Assembly (NCBI GenBank): GCA_020137815.1
Contig: CM035352.1
Span: 8,804,001 to 8,868,000, forward strand
Source of the DNA: Hormiphora californensis
Taxonomy: Eukaryota > Animalia > Ctenophora
Length of the DNA stretch: 64,000 bases
Direction: 5' to 3'
Part shown: one piece after another, positions 164 to 30,000 of the stretch
Numbering within the stretch: the first letter of the stretch is position 1
Layout of the letters: each line of letters begins with the position of its first letter
Made by a program: the position numbers and the translations under genes
Notes under the pieces: model-generated
The model's input: the letters and a program-made list of their open reading frames with translations, nothing else
What the model was told of the DNA's origin: nothing
Databases searched by the model: none

Positions 164-3100
164 TGTTATGTGTAATGGCATAACGGATGGCTTGCAATCG
201 GCGGTGCTTCGGTTCTCTCTCTCTCTCTAGATTGGAATATGTTAGAATATAATAGCAGCGACGACCTCTTTTCATGTATAACACGAGGTGGTCGAGTTGC
301 TGTATGGAAGCCCAAACTGAACAATTAGAAATGTCCCTCTGCAGTCTCTAGTATAGGATTTACATGCACTCATTACATAATTTAGGTTCATATTATGTAT
401 AATCTACTCAGGGTTAATTGTTAGCCAGACAGTGGCTTGGGATTATCTATGTAATGTATACTAATACCCAAGGCAAACTGCGTAAGACAAACTATGATGA
501 ACTCTAGATCTTTAGTTGTACTCAGCGTCTCTGTAAAAAAGGGTACTAGAGGAAGTGAGAGCTACATGTCGGTAAGTGATCGTTAGCATCTAGTAAACAC
601 ATGTGCACTTAAATACAGACGAAAAATGCATGTTACGCTTTGGAAGTTCTAGTATATGGCAATAGGGCATGGTTCGGAGAGAGAGGGTCGGGCAAGGCAA
701 GGTAATATTTCGACTACTTTACCACACAACAGATAATAGGAAACAAGTGCCAAGCTCAAAATTAAACAGCCTGAAAACTTCCTTGGAAGCTTCTAGAAAA
801 CAAGAGAGTACAGATAACTTTCTTGTACGTGTGTTACCAATATCACGTTCACAGGTTAGTGGTTACCATGGTAACTAGAGCTGAATCAGGGTTACTACAG
901 GTTACTACAGGTAACTAGATCGCTAGATCAAAAAGACAGGAGAGTATTACATGAGGTATAAACTCTGGCCACTGGCGCGTTATTTCAGATAACTTTCTCC
1001 CAGCGCGCCGCTGGGAGAAGTTAGCTGAAGTTTATCCGCCGCTGGCGGATAAACTGGTTTAAATGACGACGACGATCCCGAGGCGGAGCCGAGGGAGAGG
1101 CGGAGGGGTTTAAACCTATAACGTGCCAGTGGTCAGAGTTTATAGGTTATATACCCTGCTTTAGTTGTTTATTTCAAGTATTACACACCAACAAGAGAGA
1201 GAACACTAATCAAAACACTCAAAGAGGACTGAGAAATAGTTAAAACACCTCACAATTGAGTGTACACTGTTTGGTAACAGTTACTAAGCAGTTGCTAAGG
1301 AAAGAGAGTGAAAGAAATAGCCTGATAAGGGGCATGTCACACATAACACAGAGGAAGAGATAGTGAGACAAAAGGGGAGATAAAGAGAGAGTAATTGACG
1401 GAATGTGTCCTTTCTTTCTCTCCAATGTAGTGTGTAAGTGTTGCACATAGTGTTCCCTCTGTATTTTAGTAAGAACTGATCATTTACACACACTTTGAAT
1501 GTTCAAAATAAATAACCTGCCAGTGGGAAATAATCTGCCGCTGGACTGGCTGTTTATTGAGAGCGCGCTAGTGGGACTGGCGGGTTATTTAAGTTAGCAG
1601 GGTATATAGATTAATAACTTTCTGGTACGTGTGTTACCAATATCACGTGCACTTCCAACCTCATTGAACTCGAAGTACTAAGTGGTAGTGGCGAAGAAGA
1701 AGTGGTGATTGTATTACGCTTCTATAACTGAAACTGCAGTCATTAACCCATATAAGTGGGAAACACAAGTTTTAGTACTATTCAAGTCATAACCAAATGT
1801 AAACTGGAGATGCGGTGATGAATTCATTGGACTCAAGCACAGAGAGCAGGAGAGCTAAATTATTTAGTAAATACTATGCGGGATGTCTCGCCAGCAGTTG
1901 TGTAGGCTGGGTGCAGTAGGTTCCTTGATACTTAAGAACAATACAATCTAGATCCCCAGCCTCTCTAACGTAAAGAAGGTGAATAGATAAGATGTACACT
2001 TTAGGTATATCGCGCTTATTGGCACCAAATGCGCTTTGCCAAAATTTGGCGCCAATTGGTGTGATATACCTGAGTTATGTGTAATGGCATAACGGATGGC
2101 TTGCAATCGGCGGTGCTTCGGTTCTCTCTCTCTCTCTAGATTGGAATATGTTAGAATATAATAGCAGCGACGACCTCTTTTCATGTATAACACGAGGTGG
2201 TCGAGTTGCTGTATGGAAGCCCAAACTGAACAATTAGAAATGTCCCTCTGCAGTCTCTAGTATAGGATTTACATGCACTCATTACATAATTTAGGTTCAT
2301 ATTATGTATAATCTACTCAGGGTTAATTGTTAGCCAGACAGTGGCTTGGGATTATCTATGTAATGTATACTAATACCCAAGGCAAACTGCGTAAGACAAA
2401 CTATGATGAACTCTAGATCTTTAGTTGTACTCAGCGTCTCTGTAAAAAAGGGTACTAGAGGAAGTGAGAGCTACATGTCGGTAAGTGATCGTTAGCATCT
2501 AGTAAACACATGTGCACTTAAATACAGACGAAAAATGCATGTTACGCTTTGGAAGTTCTAGTATATGGCAATAGGGCATGGTTCGGAGAGAGAGGGTCGG
2601 GCAAGGCAAGGTAATATTTCGACTACTTTACCACACAACAGATAATAGGAAACAAGTGCCAAGCTCAAAATTAAACAGCCTGAAAACTTCCTTGGAAGCT
2701 TCTAGAAAACAAGAGAGTACAGATAACTTTCTTGTACGTGTGTTACCAATATCACGTTCACAGGTTAGTGGTTACCATGGTAACTAGAGCTGAATCAGGG
2801 TTACTACAGGTTACTACAGGTAACTAGATCGCTAGATCAAAAAGACAGGAGAGTATAACAGATTAATAACTTTCTGGTACGTGTGTTACCAATATCACGT
2901 GCACTTCCAACCTCATTGAACTCGAAGTACTAAGTGGTAGTGGCGAAGAAGAAGTGGTGATTGTATTACGCTTCTGGAACTGCAGTCATTAACCCATATA
3001 AGTGGGAAACACAAGTTCTACTACTATCCGAAACATAACCAAATGTAAACTGGAGATGCGGTGATGAATTCATTGGACTCAAGCACAGAGAGCAGGAGAG

Positions 3101-3420
3101 CTAAATACTATGCGGGATGTCTCGCCAGCAGTTGTGTAGGCTCCTACTTGAAAACAATACAATCTAGATCCCCAGCCTCTAACGTAAAGAAGGTGAATAG
3201 ATGTACATGCTTTAGGTATATGGCGCTTATTGGCGCCAATTGGTGCGATATACCTGAAGAGAGAAAGAGAGAGAGAGAGAGAAAATACTGTGCAAAGGGT
3301 TAAAGACTATGCGGGATGTCTCGCCAACAGCTGTTGTACGTAGGCTCCTAGATATTAATACTAATAATAATATCAAGAACAATACAATCTAGATCCTGCA
3401 GACTCTGACGTAAAGAAGGT
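164..3420. repeat. Tandem segmental duplication inside an androglobin intron (copy A ~164-1990, copy B ~2073-3200, partial copy ~3306-3420)
   Basis: 164-947 matches 2073-2856 at offset 1909 (identical 69-aa ORFs at 669 and 2578). 1609-1990 matches ~2861-3200 with several indels. Copy A has a ~660-bp insertion absent from copy B. Confidence 0.9.
945..1608 (+). mobile_element. Non-autonomous structured element, copy 1 (multi-hairpin head plus asymmetric inverted repeat, no TSD); superfamily uncertain (Crypton-like or HUH-type)
   Basis: Absent from the paralogous site at ~2853-2861. Outer stem 957-983/1118-1144 encloses three hairpins. Inverted repeat TATATACCCTGCT 1148-1160 / AGCAGGGTATATA 1596-1608. 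Homologous to 28448-29145. Confidence 0.85.
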
Positions 3421-3465
3421 GCAGCACAAGATAGTAACACACAGTAAAGAAACAACTTCTCTTAC

Positions 3466-6400
3466 CAATTAATCGTAGCCTATATTTCCCAGCAGCAAGT
3501 GGCCCATCAGGAGTTCTCCCTTCAACCATAACCGTGTAACCGTACTGTGGGAAATAAATCAAGTTACTTCAAGTTACTTCCTAGAATAGTTATTAAGGTG
3601 GTTAAATAAGTGGTTAAATGGAAAAGTGTAGTTAAGTTGAAACTTCTCAATCAACGCCTTGTACTGTGGGAAGCAAATCATGATTTCAAGTGGTTAAATG
3701 GGGAAGTTGAAACTTCTCAGTACCTTGTTAGGAGTGTAAAGATGTGGTTTGGGTTTCCTGCAGATGGTTGGAACCTCATTCCCATTATCGTTATCAATAA
3801 CCCGGAGCCTCAGACAGGACGCACCGGTACTACCCGGAGTGAGGGATAGGGATACGAGGGTAGGCTCCGGTGCCGTGAATACCTCTCTGACGGGGTAGTA
3901 TTCCGTATTAGTATTCCGTATTCCGATAGTACTCATTATTACGTCACAGTATGACATCATATTCTCTGGTATTTGTGGATCTGGATGGTAACTCACTTTG
4001 CCATTATGAACCAGTTTCGGGCAGGTACTTCACTGTGTGAACCATGGTGGTCAGCAAAGTAAACTATCTTCTCCCTGTCGTCCTTGAATGAGAATGTATC
4101 CAGGAGTTTAGGTCTTGCCTCTAGAACCCTAGGAGAGGACACGTTAGACTTTTAATTTGGTATTGGGAAAGTTTGGGGTAAAGAACATGTTTGAACTTAA
4201 ACTGCTTTTTTGAAACAGCAGACAGAAACTTACTTTTTGAGAATAGTAATCCCATGATTTAGTACATCTCCCTCCAATCTGCCCCACGAATCCTGCAGTA
4301 GACCCTTGACAGAGAGATTCTGTTTGTGCCCCTTTTTCACCGCTTGAGTCCTCTTTCTCACATGGTGACCCCTGAAGTGCCTCTGTATAGTATTCGCTGC
4401 AGCATGTTCCTTCCCATTTGACTCCCTCTTACCCTCACCATCTTTAGTTGACTCAAATACCTCATCATCCAGAGATAACTTCTTAAAATGAACTGGATCA
4501 AACTCAAATATTCCAGTGACACTGTCGCCTCGTCCCTTTTTGTAGGCCCTGATGATAGTTGTCGAGAATGTGGTCCAGGCGTCCCTGTGTTGTGTCGTTA
4601 GATGTTCCCCTACCGCCCCCTCCAGAGTGGAAAATAGAGACTCAAAGAACACCTTTATATCTGGAAACACAAGATCCCTGTCACGATCCTTGTCTGCACA
4701 CGATATCTCCTCGATGGTTTTAGACACTTCATCAGGATCTGAGAAGTTCTCCACTGCTTCAGATATTATTTTAACCAATCGGAGGGCTGCTGCTTGGAAT
4801 CTCAGGCTCTCCTTATTCACATGGTTAACGTATGATTCCGTATCAGCAATAACAAAAGGTGTACTGCTCAGGAGGTCAGCATGCCACGCGTAGGGTGCAG
4901 CAACGTTTAGACGCAGGGTATGGAGCCCCGCAGGGAGGGATAGTCGGCATGTTTTGGTGGTTGTAGTCTCCAGATCAAGTAGGGAGGTTGAGTGGGATGT
5001 TGTCTCACTCCATCTGTAGTTTACTATCTCCAGTTTACCGGGGACCTTCAACTGGGAAAAAGAAGTTGTGGTTAGGCAGCAGCTAGTACAGTATGCTCTC
5101 TTCTCGCTCAATGTTGTGCATAGCAAGGTCAAAAAATAAAATGTGACATTATAAGAAGCACACCACTACAACTTCGAACAAGACAAAGGTGAAGTACACG
5201 TACCAGATCGACATGTTCAGGGTTGGAGTTGTAGTTTGCAGCTTCCAGTGCAGTGTAACCCAGTGGGTTATCACTAATAGCCACTGGTCCCAGGGTAGGA
5301 TTTAGTATGACAGGGGAATCATGCCAATGAGACATGGCCGTGAAACTTACTAACATCTCAATTGGATTTGTACTGTCGATACCTGATTTGTAACTTGTTA
5401 AGGAATTCAACTGGTAGGATTTGATTTTCGCGTGTACATGATTTTGTACATTTATTGTACACCTTGCGCGTGTACATTTTCCCACACTTGGTTGCCTGGA
5501 GTTACAGTAGATTTCGCGCGCACAGGTCTGTACATCGCGCACCGCGCCCCACGTTTATGAGGGCTTGGGAAAGCAACGGAGTTTTCGATGGTCGGATACA
5601 AATTTTGCCAGATTGCAAAATAAATCTGGCAGATCTGAAAGTTAAAACACGACGATAGGCCCCTTACTAGAGGAGTTTTATAGCAAGTGAAAGGATACAG
5701 ATAATGATGGGAGGTTGTTGGTCGCCAGCCTGTCCCTGGACAAGAGAGTGGTTGTGTTGGGAGACAGTGCCAGAGGTAGGTAGGGGCGAGGGTGCGGGAA
5801 TTCCCCTAAGATGGGTTGCACTAGTAGTGTTGTGGCCACCAGCCGTTCGCCTTCCACCAGCAGGTCCAGTCACAGAGGTCGGGGAAATGTTCTGAAAACA
5901 TGGAATATTAGATTGATGATAGGTATGAATCAGAGGGGGGATGAATCAGGGGGGGGATGAATCAGAGGGGGATTCGTGGTATTTTCCTTGCTTCCGGGGC
6001 ACGGGGAAAGAGGGTTGAACAAGTATTTTTCTTACCCTCATATCTGCGACACTTCTATGACACACATAACTCGTCGTCTTATGGAACACCAGTAGACTCG
6101 AGAATGACCCCAGGAATTGTTTCATCTCGATCCAGAAGGATAGAAGAGGGGAAACCTGCTGGATATCCTCTTCTTCCTCTGCCTCCTCAACAACTTCTTC
6201 ATCTGCTGGAGCGGGTGGAACCTCAGGAAGATTATCTGGTGTCTTCTTCTTATCTTTCTTCTTCTCTGCTTTCTCAGACTTCTCATCTGCTGTCTTCTTT
6301 TTGTCTTCTTTCTTCTTCTCTCCCTTATCCTTCTCATCTTTCTTAGGTTTTCCACCCTCCTTCTTCTTCTCCTTCTTTTCATCTGTTGCTATCTTTTTGG

Positions 6401-27000: not shown

Positions 27001-30000
27001 TTTAACTAGGGAGAGAGAGGGGGATCAACATGAGTCTGTTACAAGTCTCACCCTTAATATTATACTTCGAGAACATTTATTTCGGTTCGAATAAATATAT
27101 CACTCACTCACTCTTTCTCGATCAACCATTTTATCATTCTATCTCCTTCCCGCGTCAACAATATATTATTATTTCGAACAATGCAATGACGTCACCATAT
27201 AATGTACAGAGCTGCAGTGCGCCGGTGCGAAATGTGAAAATATTCGAGAAAAAATTAAAAAAGGAAGCATTTGAGCTATATATTATTGGGGGGGGGGGGG
27301 GGGGTTCTGTGGAAATTAAGAACATACCGCTCCATAGAACATTCTGTTCAGTTCCAAAATTGGGCCATGCTGTCTATCTCGAATCATGGTTGCCTGGACG
27401 ACCTTCTTAAAGGCCATCTCCTTGTGAGACATGACGAGGGTGTTCCGGAGTGTTCGAGATACTTTCCCATCGGGCCGTGATCCCCCACTGAGATCCAACA
27501 TGGGCAGACACTTGGAGAATATCTGGGTGGGGGGTTGGTGTGGATTTGAGAAATCTCAGGGAAATAACTTGTTGAGTAGGAGTACCACCTTCTTATCTAC
27601 TCGACCAAGCATAAACATTGGAAAATGGAACAACTGCTCCTAATATTCAGCACAACTACCTTTGTGACCAGCTTAATTCATTACCTCACTAAAATTATGC
27701 ATCAGTATCAGCCTATTCCGGAGGGTTGTCAGCGGGACCTCTTGCAGTAGAGGGAACTCGTTCGGAACAGCCTGGTCTCCATTCCTGCCGTCAGGTCCAA
27801 TGAGCTGTCCGAGTGTGGTCCAAGCAATGGCATGGGCACTACCACACGCTACGCGTGTTATTTGCTTTCCCTGAAAATACGGCCGGGTTTTTAAACCTCT
27901 AATATTCTTGTTCAAACCCTTTTTTATTTTTCAATACACCGGGTCGAGCAAAAAAATACCGAGTTTAGATTACTTTGTCGAACCCTCGCGGGGGGGTACC
28001 AACCTATTTTTTTGTATTTTTTTGTATTTTTTTGTACGGTCCGTACAAAAAAATAACCAAAATTCCCTGCTTTTTCCGTACAAAAATACAAAAAAATACA
28101 AAAAAATATACTGCTGAAGGGAACTTCTTTAGGGCCCCCTATAAGTCTCTAGAGGTTTGCGGGGTCCTTATACTGGCCTGTATAGCCCTCTAGTTTCGTA
28201 GTACTCATAATCCCGGTGTCCCAGCATATTTTTTGGCCAAGAATGGCCAAAATTTATCCCCATTTTGGCCGATTTTTTCCCGTGGTCTAAGTTAGTTTGA
28301 TAATAGTTCAAGATAGTGGAACTTTAATTAAATAGTCTAAAAACGGTTGAGGTTTTGAATCTAATTTTTTTTATAGTATTTTAAAAGTTTTGAAAAAAAA
28401 TGGTCCGGGCGAGTTTCGAACCCGGGACCTTCCGCGTGTCAAGCAGATATGAAACCCGATAGCTGATTTGACAGTCGTTTGAAGAATTTGCGCGCACATG
28501 ATAACCGCCAGCTGGGAGATTTAACACCCTCCTCGCAGTTTGACAGACCAGTTCCCTCTTTCACGCGTTTCTCTTCATTTGAATAACATGCGTGTAAAAT
28601 TCTAAGTATTGAAAATGTGTGTAAACACACAGTTCTGTCAACAAAAGAAAGGGGAAACATGTCTGCAACACGTTTCAATGTTATCTCTCTCATAAGGAGT
28701 GAAAAGAATCACATTCCATTCATTTCTCTCTCTCTCATTGTCTCTTTTACTGTTCATTACCTCTGACAGTGTGTATTGCCCCTAATCTTTCTCTCTCTTT
28801 CTCAAACATGTTAGGAACAGTAGACACTAAGTCTACACACATTTTCAGGGTATCTGTTGACTATTTACCAGCAGTTCTAGTGTGTTTCACCTTGTGTTGT
28901 GTCTCTTATTTGTGTGTAATTACTATCGGGTTTCATAAAATATGAACGTTTGTTAGCCTATCGCGTTATAGGTTTAAATCACCTCCCCCTCACCCTCGGC
29001 TGGCGCCTCGGGATCGGCGTCGGGATTTAAACCAGTTTAATCGCCCTGCCGGGCGATTAAACTCCAGTTGGCTGTCCCCAGCTCGCGCTGGGAACAGCCA
29101 ACTTCATAACGCGCCAGTCTACAAACGTTCATACTTCATGTAATAACCACTACACCATGGAGGAGCTGACATAACTGCGATTTGAGAGTATATATTCTAG
29201 CGCGCACACAATTGGCCGGGGGAGAGAGGCCGATTCGGCTTTTTCAGTTTTTCGGCCTTCTTATGCCTCCTTTTTCCAGGCATGAGGGGGAATAAGTAGG
29301 CATATTCGGCCGAAAAATGAAATTTCATCAGAAAATAAAGCTTGGGCACTATCCCGACATATTTTTGCACGCTGAATCACGTGAGCTACTTTTTAAAGTG
29401 CTCATAGGTGAGGAAAGTGCCCTAATTGGCCATAATTGAACCTAATTGGTCAAAAATTGAAATTTCATAGAAGACATTGAATAGTCAAGTTTGAGCACTA
29501 ACCCCACTAATTTTGGTACGCTGAGTTACGTGAGCTACTTTTTGAAATCCTCTGATGCCAATTAAGGGTGCTAATTGACATAATTGGATGTTAATTGGTA
29601 ATGCTGAAGAATGTATTATGTAATGTCATTACCCACTATCCCCACACATGTGAGGCTTGTTCCCTTGTTCGTAAATCGGCACTTTTTGCATTTCCATTGC
29701 TTGCATGTCGTGTATTTAGGCATCGCTAATGCTATGAATTTCTGCACATTAGTAAGACTTGTTCTAGTTAGGAGTCGTGGGGACGGGGAATGGTAAAATA
29801 AACTAAACAAACACTCTAGAGGCCTTTAAAGGCCAATAGAAGGACCTCGAGCGCCTCTAGAGACCTGTAGAAGGCACCAAAGAAGTTCCCGACAGCAGTA
29901 AACTTTTTTGTATTTTTTTGTATTTTTTTGTATTTTTTTGTACGGACCGTACAAAAAAATATTGCCTGCTTTTTCCGTACATCCGTACACAAAAATGGTT

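What the first reader, a model, noticed from the sequence alone, without database searches (positions are those of the whole stretch)
945..1608. Mobile element family whose four-stem structure is conserved by compensatory changes (copies at 945-1608 + and 28448-29145 -)
Seen: both copies start TATTACATGA(G/A)GTAT and fold the same way although stem sequences differ. P1: TATAAACTCTGGCCACTGGCGCGTTAT/ATAACGTGCCAGTGGTCAGAGTTTATA vs TATGAACGTTTGTAGACTGGCGCGTTAT/ATAACGCGATAGGCTAACAAACGTTCATA. P2: AACTTTCTCCCAGC/GCTGGGAGAAGTT vs AGTTGGCTGTTCCCAGC/GCTGGGACAGCCAACT. P3: GTTTATCCGCC/GGCGGATAAAC vs GTTTAATCGCCC/GGGCGATTAAAC. P4: GGTTTAAA/TTTAAACC enclosing CCCGAGGC(GGA or GCCA)GCCGAGGG. A second IR brackets the ~460-490-bp body and also co-varies (TATATACCCTGCT vs TATGAAACCCGATAG). 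Established: GNA-type loops and tandem sheared GA pairs are very stable in single-stranded DNA and form on one strand only. Inference: selection acts on a folded single-stranded (DNA or RNA) intermediate recognised by a trans-acting enzyme, such as a Crypton tyrosine recombinase or an HUH endonuclease, rather than on duplex TIR sequence.
Basis: partly seen in the sequence, partly recalled or inferred. Interest (0 to 1): 0.85.

Follow-up and report, generated by a model that had tools for sequence, protein, structure and literature searches.

The report
Active hairpin-headed rolling-circle-like transposon family
This is a small, currently active, non-coding jumping element of a comb-jelly genome with hundreds of copies. 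One end carries a 190-base four-armed DNA fold kept intact by matched mutations. Its layout fits the Helitron2/Helentron kind of rolling-circle transposon, but the enzyme that moves it was not found.

Summary
The stems, their compensatory changes and the second inverted repeat are real. The boundaries are not: TATTAC is target DNA. An empty-site allele in the assembly's own sample shows the element is window 951-1607 (657 bp), inserted at TAN^A with no target-site duplication and still heterozygous. The second copy is 29139-28449 on the minus strand.

The family has at least 424 copies in three subfamilies, one 99-100% identical. It forms exact head-to-tail multimers, and young copies often land directly behind an older copy's 3' end.

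The layout is: terminus, 190-nt four-way junction, 12-14-nt inverted repeat, body, matching repeat at the other terminus. This matches group-2 Helitron-like elements (Helitron2/Helentron/HINE, especially the 'reverse' form). The usual short hairpin is expanded here into a branched domain.

The genome holds at least 10 intact group-2 Rep-helicase frames. No Y1, tyrosine-recombinase or IS110 domains were found.

None of the listed structured ends (non-standard sf1/sf2 copies and 95 sf3-type ends genome-wide; every exact core on contigs C1-C2) lies within 100 kb of an intact Rep-helicase frame. The partner therefore remains unidentified.

Target preference follows each subfamily's own 3' end, which hints at element-encoded target choice.

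Verdict: new variant of a known kind, moderate interest.

The parts
951..1607 (+). Copy 1 (subfamily 1), whole element, 657 bp. It could equally be 952-1608, because one A is ambiguous. Target: TAC(948-950)^A(1608).
   Evidence: An empty-site contig in run X1 joins 950 to 1608, skipping 657 bases, at a depth equal to the flanks. Flank comparison of 30 copies that are 99-100% identical.
951..1165 (+). Structured 5' domain plus the inner inverted repeat. The covariance model matches at 231 bits here and at 73 bits on the opposite strand.
957..1144 (+). P1, a 27-bp stem (957-983 with 1118-1144) that closes the four-way junction. It holds two G.T pairs on the plus strand.
   Evidence: Pairs 10/205, 14/201, 15/200, 17/198 and 19/196 changed on both sides.
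985..1029 (+). P2 hairpin (core 991-1004 with 1011-1023).
   Evidence: One pair occurs as A-T, C-G and G-C among close relatives.
1029..1055 (+). P3 hairpin (GTTTATCCGCC / GGCGGATAAAC).
   Evidence: Pairs 87/104 and 88/103 changed on both sides.
1056..1116 (+). P4: GGTTTAAA/TTTAAACC stem around a purine-rich interior.
   Evidence: Pair 117/170 is A-T in most copies and G-C in metagenome copy L152.
1074..1095 (+). Invariant core GATCCCGAGGC-loop-GCCGAGGG. It reads either as a mini-hairpin with tandem G.A pairs or as two direct CCGAGG repeats. It is the likely protein-binding site.
   Evidence: 424 exact matches in the genome against 0 in the reversed control. It never varies.
1148..1160 (+). 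Inner inverted repeat (T)ATATACCCTGCT. The preceding TTAT (1147-1150) can pair with the 5' terminal ATGA (helix P0).
1509..1591 (+). 16-bp hairpin near the 3' end. It is present in subfamilies 1 and 3 only.
   Evidence: z -3.9 on the plus strand; no counterpart in subfamily 2
1596..1607 (+). [quoted passage not shown] The following A (1608) is target DNA or the ambiguous base.
28449..29139 (-). Copy 2 (subfamily 2), whole element, 691 bp. Target: TAC(29142-29140)^A(28448). It lies inside a degenerate tRNA-Val-like sequence.
28920..29139 (-). Structured 5' domain of copy 2 (covariance model 227 bits). Inner repeat ATGAAACCCGATAG at 28936-28923.
28449..28462 (-). Terminal inverted repeat CTATCGGGTTTCAT of copy 2.

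Best explanation
The element is a non-autonomous rolling-circle (single-strand DNA) transposon of the Helitron-like group 2 kind (Helitron2/Helentron; non-autonomous forms are called HINE or DINE-1). It is closest to the 'reverse' layout, in which the hairpin lies outside the left inverted repeat.

Proposed working (inferred, not shown):
1. A Rep-helicase supplied in trans binds the conserved P4 core of the folded 5' domain.
2. It nicks the plus strand at TAN^A and peels that strand off.
3. When the 3' terminal 12-14 nt emerge, they pair with the inner repeat next to the domain. This brings the second cleavage site (YAT^A) to the enzyme.
4. The ends are joined and the strand is pasted into another TAN^A site, leaving no duplication.
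5. Failure to stop gives head-to-tail multimers.
6. 3' ends of resident copies look like termination sites, so they act as preferred targets.

Shown: the boundaries, the absence of a duplication, current activity, the fold with its covariation, the layout, the tandem forms, and intact group-2 Rep-helicase genes in the genome.

Inferred: the enzyme, the strand and the order of steps.
For: - Precise insertion without duplication. It is heterozygous in the sequenced animal. Three nested insertions at TTAA^AC confirm it.
- At least 424 copies. Thirty copies are 99.2-100% identical.
- The layout is terminus, hairpin domain, 12-14-nt inverted repeat, body, inverted repeat at the other terminus. Published group-2 elements have 12-16-nt repeats plus a stem-loop beyond one repeat. 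[quoted passage not shown]
- FoHeli1/2 insert between TNAT and A (PMC5148889). Here the target is TAT^A or TAN^A. Read on the other strand, the element starts with T and sits upstream of a T, as the curation guide describes for the second Helitron type (PMC8969392).
- Exact head-to-tail arrays have 100% identical units (L065). Mixed dimers have an old copy upstream and a young copy downstream (L016, L018, L076, L066).
- Pairing is maintained by compensatory change, and the plus strand is the more stable strand.
- The genome has 22 Helitron Rep matches, 10 of them with the group-2 marker DUF6570 in open frames of 1135-3496 aa, nine of these over 2000 aa.
- No Y1 transposase, phage-type integrase or IS110 DEDD domains were found.
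Against: - No autonomous copy was found.
- The lists covered subfamily-1 and subfamily-2 5' domains lacking a standard 3' end, 95 subfamily-3 domains, all exact cores and 3' ends on contigs C1 and C2, and stray copies of the terminal repeat. None places such an end within 100 kb of an intact Rep frame. The closest is 24-29 kb, from a Rep fragment on C8.
- The two Rep loci that could be read show no related end (L081, an element without DUF6570, and L203, 3.5 kb of the C20 contig on the C-terminal side of a group-2 frame that itself starts beyond the fetched stretch).
- Those tests need exact motifs of 13-35 nt, so a diverged partner would be missed.
- A 190-nt four-way junction is far larger than the 5-20-bp palindromes described for these elements.
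- The insertion is not a strict T^T.
- If the peeled strand carries its hairpin at the 3' end, as in canonical Helitrons, the better-folding strand here is the wrong one.
Confidence: 0.55

Rival explanations
1. A single-strand DNA transposon moved by an HUH enzyme that is not a Helitron-type Rep-helicase. Candidates are a Y1 or Replitron-like Rep, or the Rep of an exogenous single-stranded DNA virus. Element-encoded base pairing would choose the cleavage and target sites, as in IS200/IS605. This would be a new eukaryotic group.
For: - No structured end lies near any Rep-helicase gene.
- Insertion is 3' of a short conserved flank, with a similar sequence at the element's own 3' end and no duplication.
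- Target preference follows each subfamily's own 3' end. C at -3 is seen in 0 of 49 subfamily-1/3 insertions and 7 of 34 subfamily-2 insertions (p = 0.0013). This fits a G instead of an A in the inner repeat. Position -4 shows A versus T (p about 0.03-0.04).
- The conserved flank lies next to the structured end, as at the origin end of IS91.
Against: - No Y1_Tnp match was found, although the control genomes rang.
- No Viral_Rep or Parvo_NS1 match was found, but those searches had no working control.
- Replitrons have not been reported in animals, and they have short direct terminal repeats that are absent here (PMC10288648).
- Position -1 of subfamily-2 targets does not fit the pairing rule.
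- The subfamilies may simply have different enzymes.
Confidence: 0.2
2. A non-autonomous Crypton-like element. A tyrosine recombinase would excise it as a double-stranded circle and re-insert it by recombination at a short shared core (TA-N-A).
For: - There is no duplication and there are no true terminal inverted repeats.
- A short, similar sequence stands at both junctions in all copies (TANA at the 5' flank, YATA at the 3' end). This is the only published hallmark of Crypton ends (PMC8969392).
- The tandem junction equals the expected circle junction.
Against: - No Phage_integrase match was found, with all 14 controls positive. Crypton recombinases may escape that profile.
- Cryptons are low in copy number, whereas this family has hundreds.
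- The strand asymmetry of the fold and selection on intrastrand pairing are not expected for duplex recombination sites.
- The repeat-plus-hairpin layout is that of Helitron-like elements.
Confidence: 0.1
3. The structured domain works as RNA. It could be a guide or bridge-like RNA transcribed from the element's end, or a retro-element RNA, and the covariation would reflect RNA folding.
For: - G.U-compatible pairs occur only on the plus strand, which is 19-20 kcal/mol more stable as RNA.
- The inner repeat is complementary to the element's own 3' end, as a donor guide would be.
- Copies occur in contigs of RNA libraries.
Against: - No Rfam family matches and no IS110-type recombinase was found.
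- There is no poly(A) tail or duplication as a retro-element would leave.
- The RNA contig is a read-through with foreign flanks and does not show an own transcript.
- No long target-complementary guide is present.
Confidence: 0.05

Closest known systems
Group-2 Helitron-like elements in the 'reverse' layout (FoHeli3-5 of Fusarium oxysporum, proto-Helentron; PMC5148889, PMC11417382)
   Same: - The hairpin lies at one terminus, outside a 13-16-nt inverted repeat.
- The partner repeat sits at the other terminus.
- There is no target-site duplication.
- Rolling-circle biology is expected.
   Different: - The hairpin here is a 190-nt four-way junction with an invariant core, not a short degenerate hairpin.
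- There is no sequence similarity of the ends (TGCCT... / ...CTCCTGT there).
- The host is an animal (a ctenophore).
- No autonomous copy was found.
HINE / DINE-1, the non-autonomous Helentrons of mites, insects and oysters (PMC4067079, PMC7492417)
   Same: - Short, non-coding and high in copy number.
- 12-15-bp subterminal inverted repeats.
- A palindrome between one repeat and the terminus.
- No target-site change.
- Tandem arrangements.
   Different: - The HINE palindrome is 5-10 bp and the repeat lies 38-60 bp from the end. Here the distance is about 195 nt and is filled by a branched fold.
- HINEs insert in T-rich TT sites. Here the site is TAN^A.
- HINEs are 95-98% identical to a partner Helentron at their ends. 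No such partner was seen here.
FoHeli1/2 (Helitron2 of Fusarium; PMC5148889)
   Same: - Insertion between TNAT and A resembles TAT^A.
- 12-bp asymmetric terminal inverted repeats.
- Evidence for joined ends or circles.
- Hairpins.
   Different: In FoHeli1/2 the subterminal repeat and hairpin lie at the end away from the conserved flank. Here they lie next to it.
IS200/IS605 and IS91 (bacterial HUH transposons)
   Same: - No duplication and no terminal inverted repeats.
- Insertion next to a short specific sequence that resembles the other end's cleavage site.
- Folded single-strand ends.
- IS91 forms multimers by missed termination.
   Different: - These are bacterial.
- Their Y1 or Y2 transposases are not detected here.
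- Their hairpins are simple.
Parvovirus/AAV terminal hairpins
   Same: - A long palindrome encloses smaller palindromic arms.
- The stem carries short repeats that an HUH Rep could bind.
- The integrated forms are head-to-tail.
   Different: - The structure occurs at one end only.
- The element is 657 bp and has no genes.
- No parvoviral NS1 was detected (no control).
- This is a resemblance of shape only.

Membership tests
Helitron-like group 2 (Helitron2/Helentron/HINE) | Insertion without target-site duplication | tested here: met
   An empty-site allele joins 950 to 1608. Nested insertions at TTAA^AC show no duplication.
Helitron-like group 2 (Helitron2/Helentron/HINE) | Short (12-16 nt) terminal or subterminal inverted repeats | tested here: met
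   The repeats are 12 nt in subfamilies 1 and 3 and 14 nt in subfamily 2. One is at the 3' terminus and the other about 195 nt from the 5' terminus. They differ between subfamilies on both arms.
Helitron-like group 2 (Helitron2/Helentron/HINE) | Stem-loop between one inverted repeat and the adjacent terminus | tested here: met
   A 190-nt P1-P4 domain is present (z -12 and -16) with covariation. It is much larger and more branched than those described.
Helitron-like group 2 (Helitron2/Helentron/HINE) | Orientation-specific insertion at T^T, or a 5' T and insertion upstream of a T | tested here: inconclusive
   The target is TAN^A on the plus strand in 81 of 83 insertions. On the minus strand, with the ambiguous base given to the element, that is a 5' T upstream of a T. 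A strict T^T applies to only part of the insertions.
Helitron-like group 2 (Helitron2/Helentron/HINE) | An autonomous partner with the same ends that encodes Rep-helicase | tested here: inconclusive
   Ten DUF6570+Rep frames exist. No exact structured end or terminal repeat lies within 100 kb of an intact one.
Helitron-like group 2 (Helitron2/Helentron/HINE) | Head-to-tail tandem copies | tested here: met
   L065 has units that are 100% identical. L016, L018, L066 and L076 carry mixed dimers with the junction ...GGGTATAT|ATGA....
Crypton (tyrosine-recombinase transposons) | Autonomous copies that encode a tyrosine recombinase | tested here: inconclusive
   PF00589 gave no match in the genome while all 14 controls were positive. 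Crypton enzymes are divergent and may be missed.
Crypton (tyrosine-recombinase transposons) | A short direct repeat at both ends that is alike in all copies | tested here: met
   TANA stands at the 5' flank and YATA at the 3' end.
IS200/IS605-like | A Y1 HUH transposase in the genome | tested here: not met
   PF01797 gave no match, while 6 control genomes were positive.
IS110-like (bridge RNA) | A DEDD recombinase in the genome | tested here: not met
   PF01548 gave no match, while 6 control genomes were positive.
Replitron | Short direct terminal repeats and a Replitron-type Y1 Rep | not testable with these tools
   The repeats are not seen consistently (GGTAT at both ends in subfamily 1 only). 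No profile for the Replitron Rep is available. The family is not reported in animals (PMC10288648).

The most novel reading that the evidence does not exclude
The family may not be mobilised by any Helitron-type enzyme. It would then represent a new group of eukaryotic single-strand DNA transposons. A large folded origin-like domain would recruit an unidentified HUH (or other) enzyme, and the element's own inner repeat would choose both the 3' cleavage site and the target by base pairing, as in bacterial IS200/IS605. This would explain why target preference follows each subfamily's own 3' end and why no Rep-helicase gene carries these ends.
Probability: 0.2. Interest if true: 0.8.

Novelty: new variant of a known kind. 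Interest (0 to 1): 0.5.

Why it matters
Little is known experimentally about how group-2 Helitron-like elements are recognised and cut. All of the biochemistry I know of comes from one canonical Helitron.

This family is active now: one insertion is heterozygous and dozens of copies are identical. Its recognition structure is large, well defined and annotated by natural compensatory mutations. It also has an invariant core that probably binds the enzyme. Together these make it a good substrate for testing four questions:
- which strand folds;
- where the Rep cuts;
- how termination is signalled;
- whether the element's own sequence steers target choice.

If the partner turns out not to be a Rep-helicase, it would be a new transposon group in an early-branching animal.

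Tried and rejected
**Autonomous partner.**
- I searched the genome for Helitron Rep and DUF6570.
- I then compared coordinates with all exact P4 cores and 3' ends on C1 and C2.
- I also compared them with genome-wide lists of subfamily-1 and subfamily-2 5' domains without a standard 3' end. These lists came from a pattern that demands a non-G where the 3' repeat's GGG should be.
- Further lists covered 95 subfamily-3 domains and stray terminal repeats.
- Nothing lay within 100 kb of an intact Rep frame. The closest was 24-29 kb, from a Rep fragment on C8.

**Reading the Rep loci.** Only L081 (10 kb) and L203 (3.5 kb) could be fetched. Neither locus resembles the element by BLAST or by the covariance model.

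**Other enzymes.** Y1_Tnp, Phage_integrase and IS110 DEDD gave no matches with working controls. Viral_Rep and Parvo_NS1 gave no matches but had no controls.

**Other collections.**
- The core motif gave one chance hit in viral contigs.

**Truncated copies.** L072, L078 and L080 break at unrelated places. They are not premature terminations.

**A 5.1-kb candidate on C2.** Its interior (L074) has no coding frame and no subfamily-2 body.

**Other rejected readings.**
- Serine-recombinase or 2-bp-core models: base -1 is target-derived and variable.
- DIRS-like internal complementary region: only one base beyond the 3' end is complementary.
- Omega-RNA-like reading: the geometry is wrong.

**Strand-specific mutation among private substitutions.** There is no overall asymmetry (C>T 16 versus G>A 22). 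Subfamily 1 shows G>A 10 versus C>T 2, which is too few to use.

**tRNA gene as a specific target.** ARAGORN finds no tRNA even after removing the element in silico.
Full report
**What is there.**
- The two stretches are homologous over about 650 bp at 76% identity.
- The window is part of a 110.69-Mb assembly in 45 contigs. Earlier agents of this scan call the organism a comb jelly.
- Size and contig number fit the published Hormiphora californensis assembly, 110 Mb in 44 scaffolds (PMC8527503). That identification is my inference.
- Each window copy stands for a subfamily. At least 40 copies are 97-100% identical to copy 1 (subfamily 1) and at least 40 are 97-99% identical to copy 2 (subfamily 2).
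- The invariant motif GATCCCGAGGC-loop-GCCGAGGG occurs 424 times, against 0 for the reversed control.
- That search revealed a third, older group close to subfamily 1, with loop GTA (subfamily 3).
- A pattern for the 3' end occurs 688 times, against 6 for the control. Subfamily-2 copies count twice in that figure.

**True boundaries.**
- Flanks of 83 full copies diverge immediately upstream of ATGA(G/A)G and immediately after ...TAT, which is followed by A. TATTAC is therefore target DNA that the two window copies share by chance.
- In the contigs of a run from the same sample as the assembly, one contig joins window 950 directly to 1608. It skips 657 bases, with one base of ambiguity, at the depth of the unique flanks.
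- The insertion is thus heterozygous and left no duplication. The element is 951-1607, or 952-1608.
- Three insertions of subfamily 2 into older family members at TTAA^AC confirm this.
- There are no terminal inverted repeats in the usual sense.

**Target.**
- Subfamily 1: T at -3 in 30 of 30, A at -2 in 30 of 30. Position -1 is T 17, A 8, C 4, G 1. A at +1 in 29 of 30.
- Subfamily 3: TATAT^A in 16-19 of 19.
- Subfamily 2: T 26 or C 7 at -3, A at -2 in 32 of 34. Position -1 is A 17, T 11, C 6. A at +1 in 34 of 34.
- The target resembles each subfamily's own 3' end (...TATAT versus ...TTCAT). C at -3 occurs in 0 of 49 versus 7 of 34 insertions (p = 0.0013). A versus T at -4 follows the same direction (p about 0.03-0.04).

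**The fold.**
- The first 200 nt fold into P1 (27 bp) closing a four-way junction with P2, P3 and P4 (z -12.2 and -16.4).
- I aligned 36 distinct copies, including one from a marine metagenome (L152).
- On that alignment 98.0% of pair cells are standard pairs. Fourteen pairs changed on both sides, against 2-5 for slid controls. The covariation score is 0.195 against 0.02-0.05, and 0 of 500 shuffles reach it.
- About nine of the double changes separate the two deep lineages. The others arose within lineages. One P2 pair is A-T, C-G and G-C among close relatives, and one P4 pair is G-C only in L152.
- The P4 tip never varies, so its hairpin reading is unsupported by covariation. It can equally be two direct CCGAGG repeats one helical turn apart.
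- A 4-bp helix (ATGA with TTAT) places the 5' end beside the inner repeat. The 3' terminal 12-14 nt pair with that same repeat, so both ends meet on one complementary stretch. This geometry is the same in both subfamilies.

**Which strand.**
- The plus strand folds better than the minus strand by 9-10 kcal/mol as DNA and by 19-20 kcal/mol as RNA, in both subfamilies.
- The six mismatches carried by seven or more sequences are all G.T on the plus strand. None is A.C. A seventh such pair lies in the subfamily-1 hairpin near the 3' end.
- Counting all sites gives 13 against 7, which is not significant.
- Private substitutions show no overall asymmetry.
- The plus strand is therefore favoured but not proven.

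**Arrangements.**
- Exact head-to-tail arrays occur with the junction ...GGGTATAT|ATGA.... In L065 the units are 100% identical.
- Mixed dimers have an older copy upstream and a younger copy, or one of another subfamily, downstream (L016, L018, L066, L076).
- About six such adjacencies occur among the first 100 cores listed.
- Resident 3' ends are therefore strongly preferred targets.

**Comparison with known kinds.**
- Group-2 Helitron-like elements have 12-16-nt terminal inverted repeats and a stem-loop beyond one of them. They make no duplication. [quoted passage not shown]
- Their non-autonomous forms (HINE/DINE-1) have 12-15-bp subterminal repeats and a 5-10-bp palindrome (PMC4067079).
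- FoHeli1/2 insert between TNAT and A and show joined ends (PMC5148889).
- The second Helitron type starts with T and inserts upstream of a T (PMC8969392). That holds here on the minus strand under one of the two boundary readings.
- The layout therefore fits. The size and branching of the hairpin domain do not.

**The enzyme.**
- The genome has 22 matches to the Helitron Rep domain. Ten are joined to the group-2 marker DUF6570 in open frames of 1135-3496 aa, nine of them over 2000 aa.
- The one frame I could read is Rep plus PIF1 helicase without DUF6570.
- No Y1 transposase, phage-type integrase or IS110 recombinase was found, with working controls.
- No CRESS-type Rep or parvoviral NS1 was found, but those searches had no controls.
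- Every coordinate test for a structured end or terminal repeat near a Rep gene was negative.
I did not seek that DNA by other routes.
- The partner is therefore unidentified, and membership rests on architecture alone.

**Other checks.**
- No Rfam family and no tRNA were found in the window.
- The covariance model built from the alignment finds only the two window copies and L152.
- Near-identical element sequence occurs in marine metagenomes and metatranscriptomes of several studies and in a run labelled as another organism.
- The one RNA contig laid is a read-through with foreign flanks. It does not show an own transcript.

**Verdict.** This is a real, currently active family. It is best read as a non-autonomous Helitron2/Helentron-like rolling-circle element with an unusually elaborate, covariation-supported terminal fold (confidence 0.55). 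A non-Helitron single-strand DNA transposon with element-encoded target choice is the main rival (0.2).

Noticed in passing
window 28395-28448 and 29140-29185 (minus strand): Copy 2 splits a tRNA-Val-like sequence (...GGTGTAGTGGTTATTAC^ATCTGCTTGACACGCGGAAGGTCCCGGGTTCGAAACTCGCCCGGACCA followed by T8). ARAGORN calls no tRNA even after the element is removed in silico. It is probably a pseudogene or a tRNA-derived repeat.
   Followed up: partly
window 814-852 and 1614-1652: A 39-nt direct repeat (95% identical) flanks copy 1. In the empty allele the two copies would start 143 bp apart. It is host or other-repeat sequence, not a target-site duplication.
   Followed up: partly
G000: C7:4376181, C10:3950310, C5:5498673, C20:12010, C10:7239835, C14:16700, C11:4312599, C12:6575003, C1:7168904, C2:3517931: Ten group-2 Helitron-like frames (DUF6570 plus Rep, 1135-3496 aa, no stops). 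All have different scores, so there seem to be many distinct single-copy, intact-looking lineages.
   Followed up: partly
L203:2550-2765 (G000:C20): A cluster of palindromes built on a 36-nt arm (DNA-fold z -10), with (TC)n at about 1420-1690 and (AC)n at 3410-3490. It lies on the C-terminal side of the 3496-aa group-2 frame, which starts beyond the fetched stretch. It is unrelated in sequence to the element.
   Followed up: partly
L034, L053, L047 (G000 C1:8832xxx, C3:2655xxx, C1:3339xxx): Three independent subfamily-2 insertions hit the family's own AT-rich stems at TTAA^AC. Two of them are at the same position of P4 (ATTTAA^ACCAG).
   Followed up: partly
runs X7-X23 and X14: Marine metagenomes and metatranscriptomes from about ten studies hold 6-23% of the sampled words of the 2-kb query. 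So does one run labelled as a different organism. That is roughly the element without its flanks. The family, or its host, is widespread in sea water.
   Followed up: no
G000:C10:3716100-3731873: At least five 5' domains of subfamilies 1 and 3 lie within 16 kb, some 668-758 bp apart. This is a local cluster or array.
   Followed up: no
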